DNA of 38,322 nt from Octopus bimaculoides (taxonomy: Eukaryota). A model generated the notes under the pieces. That model was given only the letters and a program-made list of their open reading frames with translations, did not search any database and was not told the DNA's origin. The position numbers were made by a program, and so were the translations under genes. The DNA lies in the NCBI RefSeq assembly GCF_001194135.2, contig NC_068985.1, positions 89,544,382 to 89,582,703 on the forward strand, in the 5' to 3' direction. Below, one piece after another: positions 153-36,600 of this stretch (positions within the stretch are counted from its first letter, which is position 1; each line of letters opens with the position of its first letter).

Positions 153-641
153 TAACAATATAAAATAAAACTATAATTAATGATATAGAAGAGACAATGT
201 ATATGCTGAAAATAGACGCTAAATCATCAAACTACGTAAAATCATTTCTTTAATAGAACACACGTGCTAAAACCGAGAGAGTAGGCTAACAGACGTTCAT
301 AAAGTAATACAGGTAGCCTTAGATTGCTCAATTTCTGGATTAGTCTAATGACTTTTTCTCATCTTCAAAGCGTACTAATGAAAATTGATCAATCCAATGC
401 TCACCATTATTCTATGACTTTCTGACAGCCTAGTCCCTCGATTTCAAAACGTGTGTATTGTTAAATTGATGATTTTCGTAGTTTGGTGATTTAGCGTCTA
501 TTTTCAGCATAGGCATGGTCTTTTCTATGCCATTAATTATAATTGTATTTTATTCTATTGTAAATCTCTATATATGAATGTACCTTAATAGGCCTATTTT
601 ATATGCACGCCACTGATAAGATTTTTAACGATTTTATCCTG

Positions 642-642
<1 letters not shown>

Positions 643-689
<47 letters not shown>

Positions 690-706
690 TATTGTTGTTG
701 TTGTTT
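643..706. repeat. (ATT)n/(GTT)n microsatellite
   Basis: Directly visible. Confidence 0.95.
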
Positions 707-858
707 TCATTGTATACGGAGAGGTACAGAACAGTTCCTGGTTTCGTGTAAAGGATAATAAAGGAGGGCCAATTAATTATTATTCTTTTCAACATATACC
801 CTTCTCAGATGCACATGTTTATTACAGCGCTCTTTCAATTTTTCTAAACGTTTTAAAA

Positions 859-930
859 CTTTGGTTCCCAAACTAGTGTTCGCGTACCCCTGGGGCTTCG
901 CGAAGCAGTTTTAGGAGATACGCAAAGGGA
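859..930 (+). mobile_element. Probable solo terminus of a hAT-like DNA transposon/MITE
   Basis: CTTTGGTTCCCAAACT..GTTCGCGTACCCCTGGGG..TTCGCGAAG resembles the CAGTGGTTCCCAAACT-type hAT (Charlie-like) end with a subterminal palindrome, from recalled consensus. No partner end or TSD found. Confidence 0.4.
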
Positions 931-1106
931 TTGCCAATTTTCAGATTTATAATGTTCAAAACCCTAGGGTTTTCCGATATTAGCTACAACTAGAACCATT
1001 GAACATGCATGCACTACCGGTAACCCCTAATTTACGTCGTAAAAAAGAAACTTGCAGATATAATGCATCTGAGGCGACGTGCGCGTACTTGAACGCAGGT
1101 GTCTGT

Positions 1107-1149
1107 CTGCAGCTTTATCTATCACTGCAGCTTTATCTATCACTGCAGC
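1107..1149 (+). repeat. 18-bp tandem duplication (CTGCAGCTTTATCTATCA x2 + CTGCAGC)
   Basis: Exact copies at 1107-1124 and 1125-1142, partial third copy at 1143-1149. Confidence 0.95.
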
Positions 1150-1498
1150 GGTAACAGCTCCGAATATAACCCTGCCCAAACTATACTCCTCCAGACCAAC
1201 AGGCCAGAATATACCGCTCTCCATAGTATACCGCATGTTTACGGACAAATAACGAGTCTTGGCAATGACATACAGTTCAGGTGCGCTGCGCAGCTTGCGC
1301 AAGTCGTCTACTTTTTTTCCAATCTACCTATACATTGGGTTTATATTGGTACGTTGAATATTTGGATTTCATCACTTTAAATTGCATTGTTTAAATCGAA
1401 ATTTACATGTAACTTTTAATTCTTCATCGATTGATATTAAATATTATATATGTCTTGGGGCAACGCTTAAAAGTGTGGCACATATGTGCTATTTGTCT

Positions 1499-1665
1499 CC
1501 AGGAGTGGCTGTGTGGTAAGAAGATTGCTTCCTAATCGCATTGTTTCAGGTCCAGTTCCAATGCGTGACATCGAGTGCAAATGTCTTCTACTATAGCCTC
1601 GGGTCTACCAAAGATATGTGAGTGAATTTGGTGCTTTAAAACTGAAAGATGCCAGTCTCATCTAT
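1499..1665 (+). mobile_element. tRNA-derived SINE, family A (octopus OR/OK-type), 5' half
   Basis: Head AGGAGTGGCTGTGTGGTAAGAAG..GGTCCAGTTCCA and body GTCTTCTACTATAGCCTCGGG..CCAAAG..GTGAGTG.ATTTGG..AAACTGAAAG, shared with copies at ~9000, ~14030 and ~28535. Confidence 0.85.
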
Positions 1666-1799
1666 AAATGTATATATATAAAACAGATCTTGTTATTAAG
1701 AAATTAAGAGTCTGTCCCGTTCTCATTTCGTCCTGATCGGTATTACCTGAAAGTGTTGTTCACTGTTTTTCTTTCACTAGCATTAACGGTAGACAGACA

Positions 1800-2738
1800 G
1801 GCATAACTACAGGGTTTTACTCCCCAGATTTTGGGAGGTCATAACTTTCAGTAAAATGAATATTTTTTAATGAAATGTTTTATGCATATTGTATTTACTA
1901 TGTAGAATCCGAATATACAAAAGTTTCCGGTGAAAGTGTTTTGGAATGGGGGTGGGGGACAATTTTCGGAAATTCCAACAGTGTCCACTTAAATTCTTCT
2001 TAACTTCCAGGAAAAATTAATATTTTTTCGTGAAATTTTCTACAAATATGCCTTGATGTATGTACATTCTGAGCATATAGGAATTTTGAAGGAAACAATT
2101 TCAGGTTATTTTTGAGAAGTGTTCCCCTCTCGGTGGTGTTTCGGAGCAAGTCGTCCATAATTGTTTATTATGTGCGTATGTGCATCCGTAGATTTCTAAT
2201 GAAGTAATACGCTGCTTCTGTTCTCTTATACTTCTCTACTAGAAACGCTTACTTTGGAATTTACTTCTATTGAGGAAAAAAAATCGTGTGCATGTTATTT
2301 TGAACGAATGTTTTCTTATGACGGCTTCTCTTTTCTGCTTATTACTTCATTACAAATCTACGGATGCACATACGCACATAATAGAGACAAATGAAACAAA
2401 TATGGACGACTTACTCCGAAACACCACCGAATGGGGAACGCTTCTCAAAAATAACCTGCAGTAGTTTCCTTAAAAATTTTTACATGTTCGAAATGTACAT
2501 ACATCGAGGTATATTTGTAGAAAACTTCACGAAAAAATATTAATTTTCCTGGAAGTTAAGAAGAATTTAAGTGGACTCTGTTGGAATTTCCGAAAATTGT
2601 CTTCCACACCCATTCCAAAACACTTTTAGATTCGACATAGTAAATACTATATGCATAGAAAATTTCATAAACAAATATTCATTTTTCTGAAAGTTATGAC
2701 CTCCCAAAATCTGTGGGGTAAAACCCTGTAGTTATGCC
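1800..2738. mobile_element. Non-autonomous fold-back DNA transposon (long-TIR MITE; Merlin- or MULE-like)
   Basis: Ends GGCATAACTACAGGGTTTTA... and ...TAAAACCCTGTAGTTATGCC. Inverted arms ~1800-2209 and ~2340-2738 align throughout with substitutions and two indels. Spacer ~130 bp. Perfect 8-bp TSD GACAGACA at 1792-1799 and 2739-2746. Superfamily is an inference from GG ends plus 8-bp TSD. Confidence 0.93.
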
Positions 2739-3431
2739 GACAGACACTCTCTGCAGAAAGTTCCCGAAACACTTTACAATAAAAAATTCCCATTTCATTA
2801 GTGAAATGTTTTGCTTTGTGTATTTATATATGCGGTTGCTTATTTTCTGTATGTATCATTCGTATTTCAATGTGATTGTTAATTAAGAATCACAATTAAT
2901 GTAAAGCAAATATTTCATTAATCACTTCTGCTCTGTCTTTAATCGATTCTAGCTGAGAATTTAATATATCTTGATAATTATCACTTTTTGGATCACTGCT
3001 TAGAGTCTTATTACCAGGTTTCTATTTGACATTAATTTCCTTATTAATATGTCATTTACTCATAATTTCTGCATAGAAATGTTGTGAAAGTCTTAAAAAT
3101 ACGCTCCACAAACTTCCAGATTTAATATTCGTTTATTAAGTTATTTGAAGAAATATTAATGGTTAGATTAAAATATATTCACATTATGGAATTGTCGCAG
3201 AAATAAATGAGAAATGTATCGAGACATTAATGTTGAAGTATACTGTGTACTGTATTTACAAGGAATTAAATAAAATTTCTACTCGGTTCGCCTAATTGTG
3301 TAGCCCGATATCCGAATCACAGTGAAATTTCACGAATATATTACATGGAAAAAGAAACTATACGTAAAGGCATTCTGGTCTAAATAATACTTAATTACAT
3401 ACTTTAAATATATTCGGGCAAAGGGTTAGTT

Positions 3432-3592
3432 GGTTATATCCACCCCAGCGTTTAACCCGTACGTTATTTCATCAATCCTGAAAACAGTAAAATGTATCAG
3501 TTGAATTCGGTGGAATATGAAATCAGTAAAACGGACGAGAGGCCGCGAAGCATTTTACCCGGGTTGCTAACGATTCTGCCAGCTCGCCGTTT
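3432..3592 (-). mobile_element. tRNA-derived SINE, family B
   Basis: GCTAACGATTCTGCCAGCTCGCC terminus plus TTATTTCATCAATCC..GGACGA..GCATTTT body, shared with 30955-31168 and 27150-27335. Confidence 0.8.
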
Positions 3593-4309
3593 TACATACC
3601 TTAAATGCACTGCAACATTTTGTACATCTCATATCAACAGGGACAAGAGGATATTTTACTGATGAATAAAATGCACAATGTGGTCGAAACATAATCTTTG
3701 TCTCATTTCTCTGATTGTCTATCTGCTTTGTAAAGAAAGAAGTATGGAATCATATTATTGGAAGCAAACAGTATTTATAAAACCTTCTGCCATCGTCTGT
3801 TTTAACTATACTGAACGTTAAATTTAAAAAAAAAATAACTGAAATAACATATTCCATATTCCAAATGTATTCTATTACAAGAAATCACTTATCAACAATA
3901 GAACTTCAATTCTCCGTCGCTTCCAGTTACACGTAAATTTATAATTATTTCTTTTTGCTATATCTCAGAATGAAAGTTGAAATATATCTTTCTGCGAGAA
4001 AAAAGTTCGTTTTATATACACTGTTCTTCCGAATACGATGATTTCAAAACTTTAGACTGTTACCAGTTATTCAAAACGTATAAGAACCAGTATGTTTCGC
4101 GTCATCTGAGGAATAAAGATAGAAATAGACATTTATAAAAAGTGTAATGTCAAGAATTATGGCATCATTACAATTATTTCAATATAACATGCATTAGATT
4201 CCTTGATAATTATCAAACAGGACGAAATGAAATCTTTATAAAATAAAGAAAATGTATTTATTACCTCAAAATGAATTAAACAGAGCAAAATCTTCATTTG
4301 TATAACGCT

Positions 4310-4553
4310 ATTATACTCATTCACCACAATTTTGTCTCACTTTTATTCCTGTTTCTGTTGTTCCTGTATTTCAATAAGCCGGCTTTGTCACACTCTGTAT
4401 TACGCTGAATCTCTCCAAGAACTACGTTAAGAGTACACGTGTCTCTGGAATGCTCAGCCACTTGCACGTTAATTTCACGGGCAGGCTGTTCTGCTGATCG
4501 AAACAACTGGAACCCGCATCTTCGTAACTGACGGAATGCCACTATGTGTGTGT
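4310..4553 (+). mobile_element. SINE family C, 5'-truncated copy
   Basis: Long match to the reverse complement of 22293-22480 (CCTGTTTCTGTTGT.CCTGTATTTCAA..GCC.GC.TTGTCACAC..GCTCAGCCACTTGC.CGTTAATTTCA..GCAG.CTG..CGTAAC.GACGGA.TGCC). Confidence 0.88.
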
Positions 4554-4631
4554 GTGTGGGGGGGGGGTGTCTGTGTGTATGAGTATAATCACCATGTTGG
4601 ATCGCTGAACTCAGCATTTTTTCTTTCGTTG

Positions 4632-4772
4632 TCTCTGTTCTTTTTCTCTTATTCCTTCTTGTTGAAGAGCATAGGCTCGAAATGTAAAATACAATTGTAT
4701 ATAACCCGCGTGTCAAGACTCTTGCGATTTGTTCGTACACCCGTCTTCATCTTTTGTTTTTCTATAAATTTG
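4632..4772 (+). repeat. Interspersed ~150-bp repeat next to microsatellites (possibly a Penelope-like terminus)
   Basis: Second copy at 34385-34545 shares TTTTCTCTTATTCC..GTTGAAGA.C.TAGGCTCGAAA..AAA..CGCG.GTCAA..TTTGTT..ACAC..GTCTTCA..TT.TGTTTTTCT.TAAATT. The Penelope assignment is an inference. Confidence 0.75.
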
Positions 4773-4845
4773 AAACAAGCACCCACACACACACACACAT
4801 GTATATATATATACATACATATATATATATATAATNNNNNNNNNN

Positions 4846-5756: not shown

Positions 5757-6186
5757 NNNNNNNNNNNNNNNNNNNNNNNNNNNNNNNNNNNNNNNNNNNN
5801 NNNNNNNNNNNNNNNNNNNNNNNNNNNNNNNNNNNNNNNNNNNNNNNNNNNNNNNNNNNNNNNNNNNNNNNNNNNNNNNNNNNNNNNNNNNNNNNNNNNN
5901 NNNNNNNNNNNNNNNNNNNNNNNNNNNNNNNNNNNNNNNNNNNNNNNNNNNNNNNNNNNNNNNNNNNNNNNNNNNNNNNNNNNNNNNNNNNNNNNNNNNN
6001 NNNNNNNNNNNNNNNNNNNNNNNNNNNNNNNNNNNNNNNNNNNNNNNNNNNNNNNNNNNNNNNNNNNNNNNNNNNNNNNNNNNNNNNNNNNNNNNNNNNN
6101 NNNNNNNNNNNNNNNNNNNNNNNNNNNNNNNNNNNNNNNNNNNNNNNNNNNNNNNNNNNNNNNNNNNNNNNNNNNNNNNNNNNNNN
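5757..6186. other. Assembly gap (N run) flanked by (TA)n; further gaps at 4836-4845, 17033-17042, 23217-23457, 32507-32654, 35373-35389
   Basis: Directly visible; each gap sits between TA runs. Confidence 0.99.
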
Positions 6187-17012: not shown

Positions 17013-17042
17013 ATATCTATATATATATATATNNNNNNNNNN

Positions 17043-18414: not shown

Positions 18415-19649
18415 AAGTATAAAAGTATATGTGAACGTGGAAAATAACATATCGTCAATTACGACTGATTTAGTAACGTACTGTGTCCTTTCAAAATTGT
18501 ATTATTTTTTCTTTCATTTTCTTTCCCGTGATATGACTTCTAAATTTATAAATAATGAATACTATTAACGGAAAAGATGAGAGCAACAAATATCTCCTGG
18601 AATATCAATCAGAAGTTTCTAAAATAAGCTCAACCATAATTAAAGAAAGTGTATATGTCTCTTCCTGCTGATTATATAAGGAAAAATGCATTTTGGCTTT
18701 TGTTGTTTCTTTTTTCAAAGAGAAGCATGTAGAACCAATAGATTTATGTGGAATGTTTTAATTAGAAAGGAATTCAATAAAATATTGTCATAAATATTCT
18801 ATGGAAAAAGTCAGTCAGAAAAAATAGAAAGGACAATTAATTATATTTTACTAACGAGATATTTCATTAGGTTGTCCCAGCAATCTAAGTTCAAATTCAG
18901 ATGTCGTGGAACTTGTGGCTCATGAATTCAAAACCAGTATTTCAAATGCTTGTAATTGTTTTGTGAACCCGTTTTTCTTAATTTGTTGACTAGAAAATTA
19001 AATAGTGCAAAATAGTTACCACTCCCGAAAAAATATCGTGACACCAACAGTTATAGTTTTCTAACAGCAAAAAACCCTTTCAGAAATATATTAGTGAAAT
19101 TTGCTACAGTTTCTAATCCACAAAAAATAATGATAGTTTTCCTTGGTCGAAACATTTGGTAAAAATTGGACTAAATGCATCTTAGTGCTATTGAGTTATG
19201 GTAACCGTTGTTGCATACAAATGTTTTCATACTGGATATAATACTCCAGTTATCAATCTAAACGTTCGACAATTACTTAGCGACAAATTGACTAATACCG
19301 AGTGATAAGTACTCAGTTGATACTACTGAATAAAGGGGACGGGGTTGTCGTCACAACACGCTATCTTTTGATAATGCTAAAGATTAATAATGCTAAAGAT
19401 AGGGTTATACTTTCCAAAATATTCATAACGAGGAGGTGTTAATAAGAATTATACTTGTTTTACGTATTTCAAGTTGAATTTTCTTCAAAGAAATGCCAGC
19501 CAAAATCAGAGAATCTCTCATATACCTTGGCAGCACTGTGCATGACTCTGGAACCTGTTATTGTAGAGAAATCATTTTTTATGTGTTCAGAAAACATAAT
19601 ATTTAAAAGCAATTTCAGAAATAATTGTTTAAACGGAAAGGCAAATCTT

Positions 19650-19790
19650 CAGATCCACCTGCTTCACACGTCAGATGTCGAAATGATAGCAGAGCAACGT
19701 GTAATGAAGTGCTTTGCTCAAAAACACAACGAAACGTCTAGTCTAGGAATCGAACCGTGAGTGCAACACCTTAACCACTAAGTCATGTAC
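19650..19790 (-). mobile_element. tRNA-derived SINE, family D
   Basis: Reverse complement reads CATGACTTAGTGGTTAAGGTGTTGCACTCACGGTTCGATTCCTAG..TTGAGCAAAGCACTTCATT..GTTGCTCTG..CATTTCGACATCTGAC (A- and B-box-like motifs), matching 33645-33815. Confidence 0.85.
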
Positions 19791-21440: not shown

Positions 21441-22292
21441 GGCCATACTGATCGTTATATGCAAACTTTTTTTTTTTTTTACATTGATGAGGAATAAACT
21501 TTCTCTGATTTGCACAACATTTATGAGAAAGAAGTTTCACATTTTACTAAAAGAAAAAAAAAACACCTTCAATTTTAATAAATGAATATTTGCATTCTTG
21601 AAATATTTTTTCATTGAAATGTCACTCTGTTTTTAATTAACCCAAGAGGGTAAATGAAAAGCGGTGAACGAAAGATAATATTCGCTGGAAAATATATCCT
21701 ATATTTGAATCGTAGCTAGATGTAACCGAATTTGTATATGTGTGTGTGTAAGAGTGACTTAGCGTAATTTCAAATATCATTTTGGTGCAACAAAATACGA
21801 AAAAAAAAATACATATATCACGTGTTGATAAATGAAAATATAAAATCAATGATAATAATGAGATTCTGTACCAAGAAAATTGTCGTGATCAGTTCCCCTA
21901 CACCGATCATATCACGTCGATTTGGGGAGCGTTAAATACTTATCCACGCTTATCTATGATGCACTTAAACTACACAGGAGTCGTTTTTACACAAAATAGG
22001 ATGGAGATATTCCCAGTGCTGTTAAATGTGAGTTTTGTTTATGTGTGTGGGGAAGCAAAGATATTTACATTTTAATGTTTAACATTAGGTAGGATTAAGT
22101 GCTGGTTCCTTTCCAACACAAAGTACAAACTGCCTATATACACATCTTCACTACCAGGGAACTGGTTTCTTGGAAGACAGCATTTATAGAAACAAAAGCT
22201 CGCAACTGACATCGTGTTAAACACGTCATTATATATTTCAAACTATCATTAAAATCCTGAAAAAAGAAGTCTCGCTCAGTATGTTAGCGCAA

Positions 22293-22560
22293 TGCCACAT
22301 TCCTTCGGCACTCCGTCGGTTACAACGACGAGGGTTCATATTGATCGGATCAGTTGAGCAGGCTGCTCCTGAAATTAACGAGCAAGTGGCTGAGCATTCA
22401 GTGATTCCGCGTGACGCAGTGTGTGACAAGGCTGGCCCTTTGAAATACAGGTACAACAGAAACAGGAAGAAGGAGTGACAACGCCCGGTCTGGGAATCGA
22501 AACTGCGATCCTACAACCGTGAGTCCGCTACCCTAAACACTGGGCCACTGCACCACCAGG
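22293..22560 (-). mobile_element. SINE family C with tRNA head, apparently internally deleted
   Basis: Reverse-complement head GGTGCAGTGGCCCAGTGTTTAGGGTAGCGGACTCACGG..AGTTTCGATTCCCAG has A- and B-box-like motifs; body matches 4330-4553. Confidence 0.9.
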
Positions 22561-23216: not shown

Positions 23217-23457
23217 NNNNNNNNNNNNNNNNNNNNNNNNNNNNNNNNNNNNNNNNNNNNNNNNNNNNNNNNNNNNNNNNNNNNNNNNNNNNNNNNNNNN
23301 NNNNNNNNNNNNNNNNNNNNNNNNNNNNNNNNNNNNNNNNNNNNNNNNNNNNNNNNNNNNNNNNNNNNNNNNNNNNNNNNNNNNNNNNNNNNNNNNNNNN
23401 NNNNNNNNNNNNNNNNNNNNNNNNNNNNNNNNNNNNNNNNNNNNNNNNNNNNNNNNN

Positions 23458-24590: not shown

Positions 24591-25485
24591 CAATTCAAGT
24601 ATTAACAATCACCGCCTTATCCACCTATTTTAATTTCAATTAATGTTAAATTATTCTCAACGGATTTTTAAGGGTGAAACATATCCGTATCTCCTGTTTG
24701 TGCTTTAGCCATTAGCTAGCAACATAATATTTAAGTATTTTAAATCGCTTTGCACTGACCACCATCCAGCTCCTTTCTTGTGTCTATCTCATGAATCTGG
24801 TTCCTGTGTAGCCACAACATTTCTCGTCTTTTATTAAAACCTTCCTCTTTAACTGTAAATATTAGCACTTCTGTAGGTTGAACTATTAAGAAATCCAAGA
24901 GTAGAAGTAATTTGAAGATCGGATGCGTTTTGATTTTAATCTGATTAAATCTTGAAATATCTTTAATTAATTTAATTAAAGATGTGTACAAAATTTATTC
25001 TGATACCAATCTTAAGTGTCTTTCGATTAACCTTATAAGTATATATATGTGTGTATGTGTGTGTGTGTTTGTATAGCCCTGTTAGGTTTCCATTCGTTCG
25101 CTAAGATGATAACAATCAAAACAATTAATTTAACTGATGCACAGTTTCCAAGATAAACCTGTATTAATTCAACGACTTATCCCAGAGGGTATTTCTCAAA
25201 ACGTTGCCATTACTGGAAGTTTATGGAGTCCGCTGTCCCTGATCTATGATTAGATATTGATACACCATCAAGTTGTCATTTAAAGTGGAATAAAACTAAA
25301 CTCAGTCTTTTATTCTCTCATACAAAATACGAATTTTCGACATTGATTACAACATCCGTAATCGTTTTCTCTCTATTTATTGAACCTCTTCCTTTTTCCC
25401 TCTTTCTTCATTTTGTCACTCTGCTTCCTTTCTTTATTTCTTCTTCATGGCTTCCTCCCCCTCTCCGCCTCCTTCCCCTATTATT

Positions 25486-25608
25486 CTTCTTCTTCTTCTA
25501 CTAATTTTTCCTCTCCTCCTCCTCCTCATCATCATCATCATTCACGTCTTTCTTCTTCTTCTTCTTCTTCTTCTTCTTCTTCTTCTTCTTCTGCTTCTTC
25601 AACTTCTT

Positions 25609-25684
<76 letters not shown>
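25486..25684. repeat. Compound trinucleotide microsatellite (CTT)/(CCT)/(CAT)/(CTT)/(CTA)
   Basis: Directly visible; followed by (CT)n/(ATCT)n at ~25770-25830. Confidence 0.96.
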
Positions 25685-25685
<1 letters not shown>

Positions 25686-25795
25686 TTCTTTTTCACCTTC
25701 TTTTTGCTTTCAGCTTTCAGTCACATTTCTTACACACATTCTGTGTGTCTTTCTTTAGTTCTCTCCCTCTTTCTCTCTCTCTCTCTCTCACTCTA

Positions 25796-25830
<35 letters not shown>

Positions 25831-26874
25831 TTATCTCTGTAAGTCTTTCTTTATATCTTTCTGTATTTCCCTCTTTCCTTTCTTTTCGCTCCCTTGTTTT
25901 CTCCATTTATGTAATTCTTTCTCACAGTCTTATCCCCTCTTTCTTTCATTTCTACTTTCGTTTTTATTTTTCATTCCTCTTTTCTCCACAACACACAACC
26001 CAATTCCTCAATCTCTATCTCTCCCGCTCAGTGTAATCTTCCCAGCTTTCGCAAATCTACTGTCGTCATCTTCATAAAAGCAAATAAGATTACGGGATTT
26101 TTATCCAGTATGTACTTTGCGCTTATACGCATATCAACATGAAACCACTCGATACCGATTTTTCCCATCACTTCCACACGGTCTCAGTTTCCTGTGGGTG
26201 CTGCATTCGTCATGTCGTAGATAAAAATGACAAGGGTGAGAAAGAAAGACTCATAGACAGGTGTACAAACTGTGCGAAGAAATGAAAGAGAAACAAAACG
26301 AAAGTGGTTAAAAACCGTAAACAAGAAAAGAGGAGAAAATGTAGAAGTAAAGTCAAGTTCCACATTATACGGGGAGTAAATTTTGGAAGTTTGCTTTCAC
26401 CAACATGGGCTGTATTAGGAAAGAAGGCATTCATATAATAATTATAAATACAATGTTGTCAAATTTCTTGGTGACTATAGAAGGTAATTCAGATAATACA
26501 CATTTGAAATTAGAAATAATGATCAACTTAGAATAAAATTGTATAAACAAATTTCTGTTGAGTGAATTCTCTCATAAAATCTCTGTCATGTATTTCCTTT
26601 ATTGCTACCATCACCGTCTTTTTCTTTCCATGATTCTTTCTCTCGTGTGTGTCTGTCTATAGCTTTCTTTCACTCATTGTCTGCCCCCAAACCTAGTATG
26701 TGCACTCAGCATATGCTTCATATACTGTCTTCTTATTTCTGAGTCTCTTTCTGTTGACCTTCTCTCTATAGTCTGGAGTGGAGAATCAACGAAAACCGTA
26801 CGCTACACTCAATCTGTAGTTTTGGAAAAGTAAAAAAAACAATTTGAAAAAGTTAAAGGCTATGTCTAGTATAT

Positions 26875-27335: not shown

Positions 27336-28531
27336 AAAACCCAGTAATATTAGAAATTGATATGAACTGGATAAAACAATTTGCATATTTAACATTTTCT
27401 TAGCTGCTAAATCGATCCCGAATTCATTGGTGTCGTAACATTGTTCTCGTTCTATTTAATGTTGTCGGTAGATATTGCATGTATAGTTCATTATTTCCAT
27501 TATTTCCATAATCCTATGTCAGGATTTCTTGTATTTATTTTCTATTTGTACTTACTCCGGGTAAGCCAAAGTCGAGCAATTCTACCATCCTAGTCATTAT
27601 TTTCAGTTTCAGTTGAAGTGGTTTATTATCAAAATGATAATTTGTTATTTTAGTGAGATTGGCTGTTATTTCTACAAAACTAGTGACCACGTTCCGTTCC
27701 CGTTTTTCGAAGTTACAATATATGGGATGATGTCATCGATATAATTATCTAAATTGCTCTTCAAAATTTGTCTTCATCAGTATTGAAAACATAATTTGTT
27801 TGAATTCAAAGTAAAATTATGCTCAGGGGTTCCATTTGCGATAACAGCTATAAAGCGCCAACGTCGAAGAGCGAATCAAATACGAAGATCAAATCAATGA
27901 TCACCAAAGACGCTGATTGAATATTGTTTCACAGAAACAATTTTCAAACTCTCCTTCGAAGTTCCGTTTGATAACTGTAATTAAATCTAACGCTAATTGT
28001 TCTATAAAATTTATATTTTGTTTTTCAGAAATAATCAATTAATTTTGAATATGAAACGATTTTAATTATTTCTGCGTAATGAAATACCAGAATTGTATTT
28101 AAAGCAGGCTCGTCCATTATTTACTATTATGAAATCGTCATTTGTTTATCAATTTGTTTTGTAACAAATTACTGGATCGTAACTTCTAAGTAGGCACGTG
28201 ATTATTTTAATCTTAGAGGTCGAATTCTTAAATGAAATGGTAGTTAATACCAGTCATAATAATTCCAGAGTTGACAAGTTAACTGTTAAATTATTTCCCA
28301 AGATAATCTAAATCTCTGAGTAGTGCTAACTGAAATGCAAGTTAAAACCTTCGAAATATTTTTCTTTAAATATTATTGAAATAGGAGATGAAATGTCATT
28401 ATAATTGCATGGTGATGATGGAAAATACATCTTTTTGTATGCTTCGATTTAGGTTCAAGGATTCATGCTCCACATGAAACCGAAATAAAATAAATTATTT
28501 CTTTATATACGTCAAAAACTAGAAATAAACA

Positions 28532-28692
28532 CAGCTGGATTTGTTAAGGAATTCACAATGCAATCACAGGGTTTCGGCTTCGGTTTTACTGCGCTGTATC
28601 TCAGACACTGTTTTCTACCCTGGCCTCGAGTTAAACAGGGCTTTGTGAGTGAATCTGTTAGACGGAAACTGAACTGTATGCAATCGTCTAGT
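28532..28692 (+). mobile_element. SINE family A, 5' half, degenerate
   Basis: CACAGGGTTTCGGCTTC...ACTGCG..TGT.TTCTAC...GCCTCGAG...CA..GC.TTGTGAGTG.AT.TG.TAGACGGAAACTGAA. Confidence 0.7.
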
Positions 28693-28708
28693 ATATACAA
28701 ACACACAT

Positions 28709-28742
<34 letters not shown>

Positions 28743-28770
28743 CACACACACACACACATGCATACATACA

Positions 28771-28806
<36 letters not shown>

Positions 28807-29602
28807 TATAATCATAAATATATAGGGATTGACAGTAACCTGCTTCTCCAACACACTGAGAATTCAGAAATAGCAGTCAAAGAACTACTGATTTCAAAAC
28901 TACAAATTATTACTCCAGATTGATAGCGATATTTTTGATACACACAGAACAAAAAACAGTAGAGAAGAGTAAAAACCACCTGCCTTTAGTTAATTTAGTA
29001 CGATCGTTTCACAGTTAAGAAATCTATCGTTTCACAGTTAAGAAATCTATCGGCCAGTGAGTTCAAAATATCTCGCCCTGTTAATTATTAATTGTATTAC
29101 TAATTGACGATTCCTTGACCTGCATGTCTATATTTTAATAATACCTCTAAGGTGAATAGTTAAACCGCAAGAAGTTCGTATGGGTCTCTTTTCTATGCGG
29201 GACTATTTATGATGCACACTGAATTGAATTCATTAGGGCGAGAGATTTTGAACTCACTGGCCGATAGATTTCTTAACGTCTCCCTCACGTGGTATTGATG
29301 TCGCATGGTCAAAATGAACCTGAGTTATTTAGACGTTAACAAATTTATTGGAATATTTAGCTGAAGATCAGAATAGAGTATTATTTACTCTTAACTGTGA
29401 AACGATCGTACTAAATTAACTAAAGGCAGGTGGTTTTTACTCTTCTCTACTGTTTTTTGTTCTGTGTGTATCAAAAATATCGCTATCAATCTGGAGTAAT
29501 AATTTGTAGTTTTGAAATCAGTAGTTCTTTGACTGCTATTTCTGAATTCTCAGTGTGTTGGAGAAGCAGGTTACTGTCAATCCCTATATATTTATGATTA
29601 TA
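28807..29602. repeat. 214-bp inverted repeat, identical by eye (arms 28807-29020 and 29389-29602)
   Basis: Base-by-base reverse-complement comparison found no mismatch; spacer 368 bp. Confidence 0.96.
29037..29277. repeat. Nested 43-bp inverted repeat (29037-29079 and 29235-29277)
   Basis: GTTAAGAAATCTATCGGCCAGTGAGTTCAAAATATCTCGCCCT versus its reverse complement, one mismatch. Confidence 0.95.
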
Positions 29603-29702
29603 AATGTTTTTTACCGAAAATATTTTTTCATACTGAGCTACCCGGCAAAATTGTTAATTATTAATGTTATTACTAATTGACGATTCCCTGCCCTGCATGT
29701 CT
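29080..29702 (+). repeat. 50-bp direct repeat (29080-29129 and 29653-29702)
   Basis: GTTAATTATTAAT..TATTACTAATTGACGATTCC.TG.CCTGCATGTCT, four mismatches. Confidence 0.92.
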
Positions 29703-29949
29703 GCATATATATATATATATGGTGGCGAGGGTGCGTTATGCACGTATCTGTGTGTGCATGCATGTGTGCAATATTTTTGTTTTTTGTGTTTGTCATTCCA
29801 CATCAAACATGTTGGTTTGGTTACCTTCCTGTAACTCAGCGGTTTCGACTTAATACGTGAAGTACAAGACTTGAGAAACTGAAAGAGAAAATGACGATGA
29901 AAGTGACATTGACTCATTTGACTTGTTCGAGTTAAACACTTATCAAAGA

Positions 29950-30047
29950 TAATTTAGTGAGAATTTGAACTCAGCGAGCAACAGGGGACGAAATGTCACG
30001 AAACTTTTTTGTCCGGCGTTGTAACAATTCCACCAAATCGCCGTTTT
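29950..30047 (-). mobile_element. SINE family B fragment
   Basis: GAATTTGAACTCAG..GGACGAAATG..TTTTGTCCGGCG....AAC.ATTC..CCA..TCGCC. Confidence 0.7.
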
Positions 30048-30194
30048 ATAGGCATTACATCCTATTCCTTCAGTTTCAAAGAAGTTCGTTTAAAGGAATG
30101 CGTTTCAGTAGTAACATGAAGTATAAAAGGATAAATGAATATTTACTGAAAAGGAATTATATGTACCACAGCACGTATTTTTATATATTTAATT

Positions 30195-30280
30195 TTTTAC
30201 TTGTTTCAACCATTGAACTGCAGCCACAATGGGCCACCCCTTTTAATGAATCGATAACACCTATCATATTTTAAGCGTGA
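30195..30280 (-). mobile_element. SINE family A, 3' tail fragment
   Basis: CTTGTTTCA..CATT.AACTGC.GCCA...TGGG.CACC..TT..AATCGA, degenerate match to 22627-22700. Confidence 0.55.
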
Positions 30281-30690
30281 CGAGGCATTCTGATCTTCAA
30301 CATTACATTTTCATCACGTGTTTTACAGTCCTGTTTTGCCAAACCTGTCTCTCTTTCTGTCTCTACCATTTTGTCCCTCTACCTCTACTTCCTCCTCTCT
30401 TTGTCTCTCTATAGTTATATATGTGTGTGTATGTTTGTGTGCGTATATGTCCGTCTTTATGTGTGTGTGTCTACGACGGTCCTGATTAGCGTCGTCAAAA
30501 TTCATTCAGAATGTATCGGTATCGACAGACAGTGAGCGAACTGAAAGTTTCTTGTTGCAAAGCGAAATTAATATGCAAAAAAAAAAAAAAGGCTGATATC
30601 GTAGTTAGAAACCGGGGAGATATTTGAAAGTAAATGTAAAAAAAATTGACATATTTCTTATTACAAACATAAAACTCTTATCTTTTTCAG

Positions 30691-31168: not shown

Positions 31169-32686
31169 GGAGACATTATATTACATACAAACGGAAATCC
31201 CTAGAAGACTTGTGCATCTTTCTTTCGACGAAAGCAAAGCGAAGGTGCGTAATATTTATGTGTCGGTGATTCATTGTAGGTAATTAATTCAATGATTTGG
31301 TGCCACATACAATAGCCTGAAGATTACAGTTTAAAACAGCTTACTATTAGGCGTGCCTTACAAAGAAATTTACTATGTTGGTTATAACATATATTATTCT
31401 AAATCATGTGTTTAGTTACATTATGTTTTCGAGGTCTCCCTAAAGAGAGTTCCTTTTGTTGTACGTGTTACTTTTGGTATTACATCCTAGCTTTCGCAAC
31501 AAATATAATGGCGTTAGTGTTAATCTAACATTCTACATAAAATGAGGGGAGAGTAGTATTTGACGTTAATTGTTTCAAATATGATATGCTTCATACTGGT
31601 AAACAAGTATCAAAACGTAATGGATGTTCATACTGAGTATTTGAAAATATATGCCGTGGTAAAATTTAAGATTTTATTAATGTCTACAGAAATACTTTGC
31701 ATTTATATGAATACAAAGCTATGACTACTTACCTTATATTATCAATGGAAGAATTCCCTTCATAAAAATGAACACAATACATCTGAACTTAACAGTTTAA
31801 CATAATTTCCGTAAAGTCTTCAAGAAAATAATTTCAGCTAATTTTACGAGGCAGCAAACTGGAAATTTATGATAGCCGATTATACATTATTATTGAACAT
31901 ATTTCCGATAGAGCTATTCAAAACTAAATTATTTCGATCCTGAATCCTGATTTAGATGATCGAAATTGAAAACACTTTCGGAACCACTATATATAGATTT
32001 GTCTTCTATTCTCGCAACACACACACACACACGCACACACAGAGAGGCAACCACAGACACACAGACACACACACACATACACACACACACGCACACACAC
32101 AAACATACACACACACAAACATGCAAAAATATGTGTAGGTATATGCGTTGGTGAATGATATGAAAGTGAAATAACTGCCCCTGGTCACTTTTATGACTGA
32201 TCGAAATAGTAGTTTAGATATAACAAAGAATGTACAAACACGTTTTGCTTCTAAGTTTTTCTTTCCTAATTTTCTTTTCTTGACGCTGATAGATTTCTTT
32301 AAATGTCTTGATTTGCATGGTCGATATCACAGGAAAGAGTCGAATTCTGAGTCAGTCAAGCAAATATTCCAGAAATGGCTACATAAATTTTACACAATAT
32401 TGATATGGACTGCTTCATATTCTAAAACGGACGGAATGATTCCAAGAAACGAAAATTAAACGAAATTTATGAACAACGAACCAAAAATTCAATAAACTAT
32501 ATATATNNNNNNNNNNNNNNNNNNNNNNNNNNNNNNNNNNNNNNNNNNNNNNNNNNNNNNNNNNNNNNNNNNNNNNNNNNNNNNNNNNNNNNNNNNNNNN
32601 NNNNNNNNNNNNNNNNNNNNNNNNNNNNNNNNNNNNNNNNNNNNNNNNNNNNNNTATATATATATATATATATATATATACATACA

Positions 32687-32717
<31 letters not shown>

Positions 32718-33584
32718 GCATATGTGTGTGTTTGTGTGTGTGTGTGTGCCTGTGTGTTTGTGGGTGTATTCGCATGTGTGTATATAGATATATGTTTGTA
32801 TCATTCTATCGATTGAAGGCAAGGAAAATCATATCTTAAATAGTTCTATTTATAATCAATTATCCGTGTTAAATATATATTTACTGAGAATGATTCGAAG
32901 CCAGTGTTCATTGGACCAGTAGCAATAAATCTTTCAATTTTTTTAAACATAAATTGAGTTAGAAATACATAATGAAGAATTGGTGATTAAAAGTAGAAAA
33001 CTTCAAATTACAAAACGCAAAAAGAAACCTATGAAGAGACAGAACCCCGAGGATATATGATGAACAGTAATGACTTAGTGTGTATAGTAACTATAGAAAC
33101 GAAATAAGGAAGAGATTTACGTATACATTTAAACACACGCGCGTGCGCATGCTTAGACACATACAAGCAAACAAACACACAGACGCATATATATTCATTA
33201 TTTAAATATCATCGACCAATAGTTTCAAGTTCTGGAAAAACAATTCCGGCAGATCTATATATTGTGTCCTGTGTCTGCATGTGATCCTCCAGGCTTGAAT
33301 ACTGATATTTAAGTATACTGTGGGTTAAATAATCTTTACATCATACTGGCCGGGTTATATTTATGTTGTTCCTAGTCATAACTGCCAAGCTCTGCACTCG
33401 TCAGTTGCTTTGAATTGAATCATGTTTATATTGAGATGGACACCAATATTTTAGTATTGATATACCTAGGTGAAATAACATTAGCGACAACAGCAATAAA
33501 TATTTACACACACATACATGCACATACATACGTACATACATACATACATACACATACATACATACATACATACATATTAAATAC

Positions 33585-33639
<55 letters not shown>

Positions 33640-33644
33640 TGTTG

Positions 33645-33815
33645 TGGAGGCAAGGTGTTGCACTCACGATTTCTAAAGGGTGTGTTCCCAGACCGGTCGT
33701 TGCTTTATGTTCTTGAGCAAAGAACTTCATTTCATGTTGCTCTGAGACCATTTCGACATCTGACATGGATCCCCCGTTGCACCTGTACTTGTAATCTCGA
33801 TCTGATGGAGGATTT
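33645..33815 (+). mobile_element. SINE family D
   Basis: GGTGTTGCACTCACGA..TTCCCAGACC..TTCTTGAGCAAAG.ACTTCATTTCA.GTTGCTCTG..CATTTCGACATCTGAC, matching the reverse complement of 19650-19790. Confidence 0.85.
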
Positions 33816-35305: not shown

Positions 35306-36600
35306 GTATAATTTATATTATGTTGAGTATATTCTTTATAAAGAACAATAAGTTTATATATATATATATATANNNNNNNNNNNNNNNNNATATATATATG
35401 GCTGTCTTTGGGTCTCTATTTGTACAGACAGTGAGAGACAGGAAGAGAAAAATAGACAGAGAGAGAAAAGGAGATATTAATAGAAAGAAATTGGAAAACT
35501 CATAAGTTATAAATCGTCCTGCTGGAAAAATAATTGTGTCAGTTTGTCTGCTTCAATTATTAATGGGCTGCTAAATACTATCAGATGATATATTCATCAT
35601 TCATTACATCATAAATATAACGACACCCGGGAGGAAGAAAAAAGTATATTTCAGCTAACGTGTACAAATAAACACACAGGTAGACGAGCACATATAAACA
35701 TAAACATATAAACATACAAACACATAAACATACAAACATGCAGACATGCACCAACATTTGCATGCACACGCGCATATATAGTCGTATATATGGATAGAAA
35801 TATGTGTGTATGTACATATATTAATTACAAAGAAATTAAGATATTAATTTGAATTACATACGCATGTATACATATGATTTAAAATACAAACAAAATGGAA
35901 AAATATTGAATATAACAAGTGACTTACATCAATTATTATTTCTTAATTCAATACAAATAGACTGCATCTCATCTAACAGGTGTTTTTGCTTCCATTGTCA
36001 TATGGTATTGCCATTGATATGCTAGAAATAATATTCATCATATTTGGTAATAAAACCAATCTGGAATATAGGGCTTCATCAGACTGAAGGAAAATAGGTA
36101 CACAAAAAGAAGAGTCTAGAGAAGTAAAGGAATGGCTGAATATCTTTAAAACATACCATTTTGTTCATGTGTCGTTTTGGGATGTTGTGTAAATGACTAA
36201 AATTAAAATAGTAATTCGTGGGTTATTTTATGGGAATTTTTTCAGCAGGATATGCCAATAGGTTTAGTCAAAGTTTTGAAGTATTCGTAATAGTTCTTAA
36301 TAATTATGTTTTACATAGTAATTAATAGCTTTTTTTATCATAATCAAGGGCCCATTATTTCGTTTCAATTATTTACTTACTAAAATGTCCTGAAGTCCAA
36401 CCACCTTATTTCATATACTACATTTCCATACTTTATTTATTTATTTATGAACTGAAATCAACGACTTCCCATGATTCAGCCTTGCCATTTTTATTCCTTC
36501 TGATGCAGTGTTTACCACCTGCACAAAAGGTTATTCTTCTTTCCGAGTCATGTTTATATAATTTGTACTTCTGTGTTAAGCGAGGTGTACCTTTTCTTAC

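What the first reader, a model, noticed from the sequence alone, without database searches (positions are those of the whole stretch)
28807..29702. Nested inverted-duplication structure with a mismatch-free 214-bp hairpin
Segment order is A(28807-29020), B(29037-29079), C(29080-29129), unique, B'(29235-29277), unique, A'(29389-29602), unique, C2(29653-29702). A/A' has no mismatch by eye, B/B' has 1 in 43, and C/C2 has 4 in 50. Every other dispersed repeat here is visibly decayed, so the A duplication is very recent or is being homogenised. The different divergence levels suggest layered events. The layout (inverted copies of upstream flank inside a direct-repeat-bounded segment) fits replication template switching (FoSTeS/MMBIR-type) or capture by a small element. 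If transcribed, it would fold into a 214-bp perfect duplex with a second stem in its loop, a strong candidate ADAR or endo-siRNA substrate in an animal group known for extensive A-to-I editing (inference).
Basis: partly seen in the sequence, partly recalled or inferred. Interest (0 to 1): 0.72.

Follow-up and report, generated by a model that had tools for sequence, protein, structure and literature searches.

The report
Inverted partial duplicate of a repeat copy
The perfect 214-bp hairpin is present in the assembly, but it is made of a mobile-repeat family with thousands of genomic copies, one copy of which was partly re-copied backwards next to itself, and no RNA from this locus was detected, so it is an ordinary, probably inert structural scar.

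Summary
A (28807-29020) and A' (29389-29602) are perfectly complementary over 214 nt. B/B' has 1 mismatch in 43, and C/C2 is a 92% direct repeat.

Every segment belongs to a high-copy interspersed repeat family. Raw-read depth is 200-3,700 against about 0.8 for unique flanks, which means roughly 250 to 4,600 copies.

Reads show that the right half, C-loop-B'-111 bp-A'-u-C2, is the normal family layout. The C/C2 repeat is therefore inherited from the family and was not made at this locus.

The left arm, A-B, is the derived part. It lacks 118 bp, lost between two 7-bp repeats, and carries a 23-bp tandem duplication. Its A-to-B junction has only single-copy depth.

Both arms share letters that are rare in the family, so one arm was copied from the other. 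The copying happened long after the resident copy had drifted about 2-5% from the family consensus.

The best explanation is a recent local inverted duplication by fold-back repair or template switching.

A and B do not differ significantly in divergence (p=0.17).

Unique flanks have zero RNA depth, so the ADAR/siRNA idea has no support here.

The assembly is a gapped scaffold, and independent read support for the left arm is thin. Interest is low.

The parts
28692..28806 (.). Compound microsatellite (CA)n(CATA)n(TA)n abutting the outer end of the left arm. It is the outer breakpoint of the inverted copy.
   Evidence: D1. The homology of A to rc(A'+u) stops at TATAATCAT, inside TA-rich sequence.
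28807..29020 (+). A: left arm, the inverted copy of A'. It is high-copy repeat-family sequence, with a core at 28842-28900 present in about 4,600 copies.
   Evidence: Perfect 214-nt complement of 29389-29602. Depth is 640-3,700 against 0.8 for unique sequence. It shares the rare letter C at 28854, where the family has T in about 98.6% of reads.
29003..29048 (+). Perfect 23-bp tandem duplication (ATCGTTTCACAGTTAAGAAATCT x2). It spans the site where 118 bp are missing relative to the right arm and the family. This junction is specific to the locus.
   Evidence: (D5). Raw-read depth over 29022-29036 is about 1 read in X21, 0.5 in X22 and about 0.3 in RNA. One X21 read at >=99% covers 29021-29056.
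29037..29079 (+). B: inner part of the left arm, the inverted copy of B'. It ends at the B|C breakpoint (29079|29080), which has 1 bp (T) of possible microhomology.
   Evidence: 42 of 43 matches to rc(29235-29277) (I8). It shares the rare C at 29047, where the family has T. In the family, C is preceded by u, not by B (section 5c).
29080..29129 (+). C: a family module at the 5' side of the resident copy. It is a direct repeat of C2 and forms the first part of the spacer between the arms.
   Evidence: 92% to 29652-29702. The family letters at 29115, 29118 and 29126 differ from this copy. The C-to-loop continuity is common in the family (joint 29699->29127).
29130..29234 (+). Loop: single-orientation family sequence that makes up the rest of the 155-bp spacer (29080-29234).
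   Evidence: Depth is 160-580 and rises towards B'. Loop-to-B' continuity is shown by the joint 29079<->29234 on opposite strands.
29235..29277 (+). B': the original (template) copy of B within the resident element. It ends in TCTTAAC (29271-77).
   Evidence: Family depth is continuous across it.
29278..29388 (+). The 111-bp segment present in the right arm and in the family but deleted from the left arm. It is bounded by the 7-bp direct repeat TCTTAAC (29271-77 and 29389-95).
   Evidence: In 369 (X21) and 623 (X22) reads, A is followed by GTAAATAATACTCTATTCTGATCTTCAGCT, which is rc(29359-29388), so the segment is ancestral (section 7).
29389..29602 (+). A': the original (template) copy of A within the resident element.
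   Evidence: The family continues beyond 29602 into u, so the end of the arm is not an element terminus (depth and loose ends at 29568 and 29623).
29603..29652 (+). u: family sequence joining A' to C2. It is absent from the left arm.
   Evidence: Letters found between A and C in family reads, for example ...CATACTGAGCTACCCGGCAAAAT (section 5c). Depth is 450-1,180.
29653..29702 (+). C2: the family's terminal module. Family similarity ends at about 29694-29702 and is followed by heterogeneous AT-rich sequence.
   Evidence: depth falls from about 1,080 to 13 after 29712, and the loose ends at 29694 agree only weakly (0.46).
29703..29720 (.). (TA)n tract after C2, a possible simple-repeat tail or insertion target of the resident copy.
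   Evidence: All six N-gaps of the window also lie in (TA)n tracts.

Best explanation
A resident copy of a high-copy, unclassified interspersed repeat occupies about 29080-29702, in the order C-loop-B'-111 bp-A'-u-C2. It probably moves as a non-autonomous, retroposon-like element.

Long after that copy was inserted, a roughly 368-bp internal piece of it (B' through A') was re-synthesised in inverted orientation. The new copy was joined immediately upstream of C, leaving a 155-bp single-copy spacer (C plus loop).

The most likely route is as follows (inferred). A break or stalled fork occurred at the neighbouring (CA)n(CATA)n(TA)n microsatellite or element boundary. The free 3' end folded back or switched to the complementary strand, copied B' to A', and was recaptured in the (TA)n tract.

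The copied arm lacks 118 bp between two 7-bp repeats and carries a 23-bp tandem duplication exactly at that point. These are slippage-type errors, made either during the same error-prone synthesis or soon afterwards (inferred).

The product is a 214 + 43 bp inverted repeat. It could fold if it were transcribed, but no transcription of this locus is seen. It is best read as a neutral, recent and possibly polymorphic structural scar, not as a functional hairpin gene.
For: High copy number:
- X21 raw-read depth is 200-1,100 over 28810-29718, against about 0.8 on unique flanks.
- Depth reaches 3,700 on the core.

The right half is the canonical family layout:
- The C-to-loop joint (29699->29127) is seen in 79 and 139 reads.
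- Loop-to-B' continuity is shown by a joint.
- A is followed by rc(111-bp segment) in 369 and 623 reads.
- A'-u-C continuity appears, section 5c.

The left-arm layout is unique to this locus:
- Depth over 29022-29036 is about 1 read.

The arms derive from each other:
- Both carry C/G at 28854/29555, where the family has T/A in 98.6% of reads.
- Among reads at >=99% likeness, only 8 of about 530 carry the window letter, which is about 1-2 genome copies.
- Both also carry the rare letter at 29047/29267.
- The arms are identical at about 10 sites where the family is split roughly 50:50.

Age contrast:
- The resident copy differs from the family at about 11 near-fixed sites and about 31 majority sites in 575 bp (2-5%).
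- The arms differ by 1 in about 250 nt.

Breakpoints:
- Both ends of the left arm lie inside the family unit, not at its termini.

Known precedent:
- The layout of inverted copy, single-copy spacer, then original is the signature of fold-back inverted duplication (PMC3907307).
- It also matches templated inverted insertions at breaks, where the second end is captured by end joining (PMC11724301).

Independent support:
- One X21 read at >=99% spans the A-dup-B junction.
Against: - Microhomology at the B|C junction is only 1 bp. Published fold-back junctions show 2-8 bp (PMC3907307), so the mechanism is not pinned down.
- No independent read unambiguously spans the B|C junction. At >=99% likeness, 29082-29141 has zero depth in all three raw DNA runs, where about 6 reads were expected.
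- Left-specific depth (about 1-3 reads) is lower than right-specific depth (about 6.4 reads). The left arm may therefore be polymorphic, or the assembly may be locally wrong.
- The assembly is a gapped scaffold (N-runs in (TA)n).
- Other near-identical family copies also have (TA)n right after the position equivalent to 29602 (24 X22 reads; an expressed copy). The outer 'breakpoint' could therefore be a recurrent or inherited feature of the family.
Confidence: 0.62

Rival explanations
1. Two independent insertions of the same young repeat family landed head-to-head in opposite orientation. The left one is a 5'-truncated copy with its own (TA)n(TGTA)n(TG)n tail. The arms may later have been homogenised by gene conversion.
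For: - The family is abundant and has many near-identical members. Depth is about 75-175 per run at >=99% likeness over the core of A.
- Other copies end at the same position (the equivalent of 29602) followed by (TA)n or (TA)n(TGTA)n.
- Similar compound microsatellites occur at several other places in the window.
- Octopus-type genomes are reported to hold hundreds of recently active SINE families and Dong-R4 LINEs (PMC13282606), if organism A is such a genome.
Against: - The arms share letters that only about 1-2 genome copies carry, and they are identical at all family-polymorphic sites.
- The two copies abut with no intervening base, and no target-site duplication is visible.
- The right copy has u-C2 after A', so the two would belong to different subfamilies and yet be identical.
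- The inner end of the left arm is not a family terminus.
- Gene conversion would have to cover both A and B exactly.
Confidence: 0.15
2. The left arm, or its joint to C, is an assembly artefact. It would be a chimeric or mis-closed stretch inside a high-copy repeat in a short-read scaffold.
For: - The window has six N-gaps, all in (TA)n, and the finding lies between two (TA)n tracts.
- No Logan contig from X1, X2, X4 or X10 covers 29021-29044 or 29111-29135.
- No run's contigs hold the left-specific words.
- 29082-29141 has zero raw-read depth at >=99% in three runs.
- The B|C junction is not unambiguously spanned by any read.
Against: - The contig negative is uninformative. The same contigs also miss the right copy's private stretch 29269-29360.
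- The A-dup-B junction is a unique sequence that an assembler cannot build without reads, and one independent 2026 read matches it at >=99%.
- A second read carries B's private A at 29070.
- A missed-adapter palindrome would have no 155-bp asymmetric spacer and no indels between the arms.
Confidence: 0.13
3. The locus is a functional hairpin-RNA source. Transcription through the inverted repeat would give a roughly 214-bp duplex that is edited by ADAR or diced into endo-siRNAs, which would act against the transcribed members of the same repeat family.
For: - The predicted fold is extremely stable.
- The family is transcribed elsewhere in the genome (RNA depth 60-230 at >=88%).
- Some RNA-only T>C and A>G differences at 20-30% occur in family reads, at 28836, 28844, 28909 and 28912.
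Against: - Unique flanks 27800-28607 and 29820-30122 have depth 0 in raw RNA run X24 and only isolated bins of low contig depth in the three RNA contig sets.
- The locus-specific junction has about 0.2 reads.
- At >=97% likeness, all RNA reads at 28854 and 29555 carry the family letters.
- RNA-only differences include non-editing types (28975 A>C, 29006 G>A), so they probably mark a few expressed copies.
- No small-RNA data could be examined.
Confidence: 0.04
4. The whole block is a member of a fold-back or MITE-type transposon family, and A-B / B'-A' are its long terminal inverted repeats.
For: The segments are present in hundreds to thousands of copies. The block lies between TA-rich tracts.
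Against: - The A-dup-B junction is single-copy.
- With both arms available, 29012-29112 has only about 14 depth against 500-1,100 on the right half.
- The family continues past the outer end of A' into u-C2.
- In the family, B' is preceded by loop and C is preceded by u, so the arms are not element termini.
Confidence: 0.03

Closest known systems
Fold-back inverted duplications with a single-copy spacer (Hermetz et al. 2014, PMC3907307; yeast foldback inversions, PMC7467729)
   Same: The order is inverted copy, non-duplicated spacer, then original, and the junction lies at the spacer edge. Repeats and microsatellite-type sequence sit at the breakpoints.
   Different: The scale is about 370 bp with a 155-bp spacer, against kilobases to megabases with 0.8-70 kb spacers. 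The event is interstitial, with no terminal deletion. There is only 1 bp of inverted microhomology, against 2-8 bp.
Templated inverted insertions at double-strand breaks by foldback synthesis plus end joining (PMC11724301); FoSTeS/MMBIR template switching
   Same: A local template is copied in inverted orientation next to the break, and the second end is captured by (micro)homology-poor joining. Extra slippage errors are present: a deletion between 7-bp repeats and a 23-bp tandem duplication with 4-bp ATCG homology.
   Different: The insertions reported in yeast are mostly 5-34 bp, while this one is about 250-370 bp. The enzymology and timing cannot be tested from sequence.
Inverted SINE pairs (for example inverted Alu pairs) as dsRNA and ADAR substrates (own knowledge)
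   Same: Two copies of a high-copy short repeat lie in opposite orientation within 400 bp and could form a long duplex if they sat within one transcript.
   Different: Here the pair arose by local duplication, not by two insertions. The locus shows no transcription in the RNA data examined, so no editing can be assessed.
Drosophila hairpin-RNA (hpRNA) endo-siRNA loci born by inverted duplication (own knowledge)
   Same: A young inverted duplication has near-perfect arms, and transcribed targets exist elsewhere in the genome.
   Different: There is no evidence of a promoter, a transcript or small RNAs. The arms are repeat-family sequence in a non-coding, gap-rich region.

Membership tests
Fold-back / MITE transposon family with long terminal inverted repeats | Many genomic copies share the same inverted-arm layout | tested here: not met
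   Depth over the A-dup-B junction (29022-29036) is about 1 read, against 400-3,700 on the arms. 29012-29112 has about 14, against 500-1,100 on the right half.
Fold-back / MITE transposon family with long terminal inverted repeats | The outer ends of the arms coincide with the element termini and are flanked by a target-site duplication | tested here: not met
   Family reads continue from A' into u-C2 (section 5c). No target-site duplication is seen beyond trivial TA.
Fold-back inverted duplication (PMC3907307) | A non-duplicated spacer lies between the inverted and the non-inverted copies | tested here: met
   The 155-bp spacer 29080-29234 (C plus loop) is present once between B and B'.
Fold-back inverted duplication (PMC3907307) | Inverted microhomology of at least 2 bp at the spacer/inversion junction | tested here: not met
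   Only 1 bp (T at 29079) can be shared between the end of B and the family sequence preceding C.
FoSTeS/MMBIR-type replicative template switching | Several template switches with microhomology at each joint, giving a complex product | tested here: inconclusive
   The joints have 1 bp (B|C), about 4 bp of TA-type homology (microsatellite|A), a 7-bp repeat (118-bp deletion) and a 4-bp ATCG match (23-bp duplication). These could equally be successive independent events.
tRNA-derived SINE | tRNA-like head with Pol III A and B boxes | tested here: not met
   ARAGORN finds nothing in the window or in a majority-corrected consensus. No Rfam match was found. Only a loose A-box-like motif is present, and no B box.
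Non-LTR retroposon-like interspersed repeat (SINE or LINE tail) | High copy number, a shared 3' end followed by variable simple or AT-rich tails, and variable 5' truncation | tested here: inconclusive
   Copy number is hundreds to thousands. Similarity ends at about 29694-29702 and is followed by heterogeneous AT-rich sequence. Depth rises from 29125 to 29290. No autonomous partner, target-site duplications or full consensus could be obtained.
hpRNA / endo-siRNA or ADAR-substrate hairpin locus | Transcription through both arms in one RNA | tested here: not met
   RNA depth is zero on the unique flanks in raw run X24 and near zero in three RNA contig sets, and about 0.2 reads on the locus-specific junction. 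RNA reads on A carry the family letters, not the locus letters.
hpRNA / endo-siRNA or ADAR-substrate hairpin locus | 21-22-nt small RNAs or clustered A-to-G changes that map specifically to the arms | not testable with these tools
   No small-RNA run was available, and there were no locus-specific RNA reads in which to score editing.

The most novel reading that the evidence does not exclude
The inverted duplication is a newly born, still polymorphic hairpin locus. In some tissue or stage that was not sampled, it would be transcribed and yield dsRNA-derived small RNAs (or a hyper-edited RNA) against a young, transcribed repeat family that has many near-identical copies. That would be a snapshot of how a genome first acquires an RNAi-type 'trap' for an active element.
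Probability: 0.04. Interest if true: 0.6.

Novelty: new member of a known kind. Interest (0 to 1): 0.17.

Why it matters
As found, it matters little. It is one more small inverted duplication inside repeat-rich, non-coding DNA.

It has two modest uses:
- It is a clean, datable example of a sub-kilobase inverted duplication with a spacer. It shows that fold-back or template-switch events known from human disease and yeast also sculpt repeats in this genome.
- It is a caution for scans. A 'mismatch-free' hairpin can consist of a repeat family with many near-identical copies, so perfect identity alone does not mark something special.

If long reads showed the structure to be polymorphic among individuals, it could serve as a marker for a very recent rearrangement next to a compound microsatellite.

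Tried and rejected
- Self-BLAST of 28601-29900 against the whole window found no other copy of A, B or C, only microsatellite hits.
- tRNA and Rfam searches, including on a majority-corrected family consensus, gave nothing, so the family could not be classified as a tRNA-SINE.
- A search for PacBio runs found none, so no long-read test of the assembly was possible.
- Logan contigs were tried as a test of the left-arm junctions. I rejected them as evidence because a positive control failed: the contigs also miss the right copy's private stretch 29269-29360.
- I tested whether the sequence left of the microsatellite (28540-28705) is an inverted copy of u, C or loop, which would extend the palindrome. 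It is not significant: the best hit is a 22-nt alignment at p~0.03 before correcting for six tests.
- ORF listing of the whole window and its GC-richer parts shows only low-complexity or repeat-derived frames, with no gene to place the locus in. These frames were not searched against protein libraries.
- I considered RNA-only T>C and A>G differences as a sign of editing. I rejected this as proof because RNA-only A>C and G>A differences occur at similar frequency.
- The 28-nt palindrome at clipped read ends was considered as a genomic partner sequence. I judged it to be a library linker, because it occurs at many different positions and between joined fragments.
- An 8-mer, GGCGAGGG, is shared between the right flank (29724-31) and the family form of B'. 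I judged this a coincidence, because nothing around it aligns.

Full report
**1. What is in the sequence**

- 28807-29020 is a perfect reverse complement of 29389-29602 (214 nt). It extends to 28804/29605 with a single mismatch at 28806.
- 29037-29079 matches 29235-29277 with 1 mismatch in 43.
- 29079-29129 and 29652-29702 are a 92% direct repeat.

As single-stranded RNA the region folds at -491.6 kcal/mol, against -169 +/- 4.6 for shuffles (z = -70.6). Chance is excluded.

Two details change the anatomy.
- First, A and B are one arm. In the right arm they are separated by 111 bp (29278-29388) that lie between two copies of TCTTAAC (29271-77 and 29389-95).
- In the left arm these 111 bp and one 7-mer are missing.
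- Second, a perfect 23-bp tandem duplication (29003-25/29026-48) sits exactly at that point.

A+B against C (4/50) is significant (p=0.003).

**2. The segments are a high-copy repeat family**

Raw genomic reads of run X21 give about 0.8x on the unique flanks but 200-1,100x over 28810-29718.
- With one arm as the only reference, the core 28842-28900 reaches about 3,700x, or roughly 4,600 copies.
- The rest of A gives about 640-1,000x, C about 900x, and the loop 200-480x.
- At >=99% likeness, depth over the core of A is still about 75-175 per run. These are mostly partial local matches, so they show many near-identical members but not a firm copy count.

A mismatch-free pair is therefore less remarkable than it looks. 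ARAGORN and Rfam find no tRNA-like head or known RNA family, so the family stays unclassified. Its similarity ends at about 29694-29702, followed by heterogeneous AT-rich sequence, and depth rises from 29125 to 29290. This resembles a retroposon-like element, but that is inference.

**3. Which half is original**

Reads reconstruct the family layout as follows.
- C is followed by the loop (joint 29699->29127, 'goes back 573', in 79 and 139 reads).
- The loop is followed by B' (joint 29079<->29234).
- A is followed by the reverse complement of the 111-bp segment (369 and 623 reads continue as GTAAATAATACTCTATTCTGATCTTCAGCT).
- A' is followed by u and then C (section 5c).

The right half, C-loop-B'-111 bp-A'-u-C2, is therefore an ordinary family member, and the C/C2 direct repeat comes with the family.

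The left arm is the derived part.
- Its A-dup-B junction has about one read of depth.
- In the family, C is preceded by u, not by B, so 29079|29080 is a locus-specific breakpoint.
- The family also runs on past the outer end of A'. Both ends of the left arm therefore fall inside the family unit.

**4. The arms were copied from each other, recently**

- This copy differs from the family at about 11 near-fixed sites and about 31 majority sites in 575 bp, or 2-5%.
- The arms differ by 1 in about 250 nt.
- Both arms carry C/G at 28854/29555, where 98.6% of family reads have T/A.
- Among reads at >=99% likeness, only 8 of about 530 have the window letter, which is about one or two genome copies.
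- Both arms also carry the rare letter at 29047/29267, and they agree at about ten sites where the family is split roughly evenly.

Two independent insertions would not be expected to share all this.

**5. Mechanism (inferred)**

The order 'inverted copy, single-copy spacer, original' is the signature of fold-back inverted duplication (PMC3907307). It also matches templated inverted insertions at breaks, in which one end is extended by synthesis and the other is captured by end joining (PMC11724301).

A break or stalled fork beside the compound microsatellite would leave a 3' end that folds back or switches strand. That end would copy B' through A' and rejoin in the (TA)n tract.

The 118-bp loss between 7-bp repeats and the 23-bp duplication with 4-bp ATCG homology look like slippage in the same error-prone synthesis. 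They could also be later events.

Against a strict fold-back reading, the B|C junction offers only 1 bp of microhomology.

**6. Is the assembly right?**

The window is a gapped scaffold. All six N-runs lie in (TA)n, and the finding sits between two (TA)n tracts.

Logan contigs show nothing on 29021-29044 or 29111-29135. They also miss the right copy's private stretch 29269-29360, so this negative is uninformative.

In raw reads:
- One X21 read at >=99% spans 29021-29056.
- Another X21 read matches 29050-29079 and includes B's private A at 29070.
- X22 and X23 give 0-1 left-specific reads, against 2-3 per run on the right-specific stretch.
- 29082-29141 has no read at >=99% in any of the three runs.
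- No read unambiguously crosses B|C.

The left arm therefore exists in at least one independent data set. Its linkage to C remains unverified, however, and it may be polymorphic. No long-read run could be found.

**7. Transcription and editing**

At >=97% likeness, raw RNA run X24 has zero depth on the unique flanks (27800-28607 and 29820-30122). The three RNA contig sets show only isolated bins of low depth there. The junction bin holds about 0.2 reads, and every RNA read at 28854 and 29555 carries the family letters. RNA on A therefore comes from other copies.

RNA-only T>C and A>G changes at 20-30% occur at 28836, 28844, 28909 and 28912. RNA-only A>C (28975) and G>A (29006) changes occur too. 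These are better explained by a few expressed variant copies than by editing. The ADAR/siRNA proposal has no support at this locus, and small RNAs could not be tested.

**8. Verdict**

What it shows is an ordinary kind of thing: a recent, local, inverted partial duplication of one copy of a very abundant repeat, in non-coding, untranscribed, repeat-rich DNA.

Estimated confidence for each explanation:

| Explanation | Confidence |
|---|---|
| Local inverted duplication | 0.62 |
| Two independent insertions, with or without gene conversion | 0.15 |
| Assembly artefact | 0.13 |
| Functional hairpin-RNA source | 0.04 |
| Fold-back transposon family | 0.03 |

Noticed in passing
Read ends laid at many places, e.g. 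28823, 28887, 28929, 29538, 29546, 29586 (runs X21-X23): Clipped parts of many genomic reads read GGTTCGTCCATCGATCGATGGACGAACC, a perfect 28-nt palindrome. It also appears between two joined fragments. It is most likely a bridge or linker of a proximity-ligation-type library and not genomic sequence. It makes most reads of these runs only partly alignable.
   Followed up: partly
window 4836-4845, 5757-6186, 17033-17042, 23217-23457, 32507-32654, 35373-35389: All six N-gaps of the window lie inside (TA)n tracts. The assembly is therefore a gapped scaffold that breaks at TA microsatellites.
   Followed up: yes
window 28608-28708: The roughly 100 bp just upstream of the (CA)n(CATA)n(TA)n microsatellite are also high-copy (about 1,600x in X21). 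The family letters differ from this copy at 28652, 28655 and 28658. This looks like the end of another repeat whose tail may be the microsatellite.
   Followed up: no
window 30123-30223 and 30325-30526: Two further moderately repeated stretches (about 85x and 160-350x in X21) lie downstream of the finding. The second is partly a TG-rich microsatellite that pairs weakly with the CA tract at 28709-28786.
   Followed up: no
position 29602 (equivalent to 28807 on the left arm): Other family copies also switch to (TA)n or (TA)n(TGTA)n exactly after ...TGATTATA. There are 24 X22 reads at >=99% likeness, and one strongly expressed copy (55 RNA reads, TATATATGTATGTATAAATATTTTGATATA). The outer boundary of the left arm is therefore a recurrent microsatellite site in the family. 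This is unexplained.
   Followed up: partly
28836, 28844, 28909, 28912, 28975, 29006, 29607 (family-level RNA reads, run X24): Differences at 20-55% in RNA are below 1-2% in DNA at most of these sites (about 12% at 29607). Four are T>C or A>G (possible editing of other copies) and three are not (A>C, G>A, T>A). More likely a few expressed variant copies dominate the RNA.
   Followed up: partly
window 4321-4740 (-) and 22281-22478 (+); 19455-19760 (+) and 33401-33766 (-): Two pairs of ORF-like frames share motifs (…CDKAG.LKYR.NRNR… and …SDVEM..EQ..MK.FAQ.H…). This shows that older dispersed repeat families are present in the window, some next to compound microsatellites.
   Followed up: no
window 25001-26000: This is a strongly strand-skewed, low-complexity, pyrimidine-rich stretch (GC skew -0.54, AT skew -0.37). 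It translates into long S/T/L runs.
   Followed up: no
runs X21 against X22/X23 over C/u (29082-29126, 29629-29691): The C/u module is 2.5-3 times deeper in X22 than in X21, while the loop is similar in both runs. Either copy number differs between individuals or library bias affects this module.
   Followed up: no
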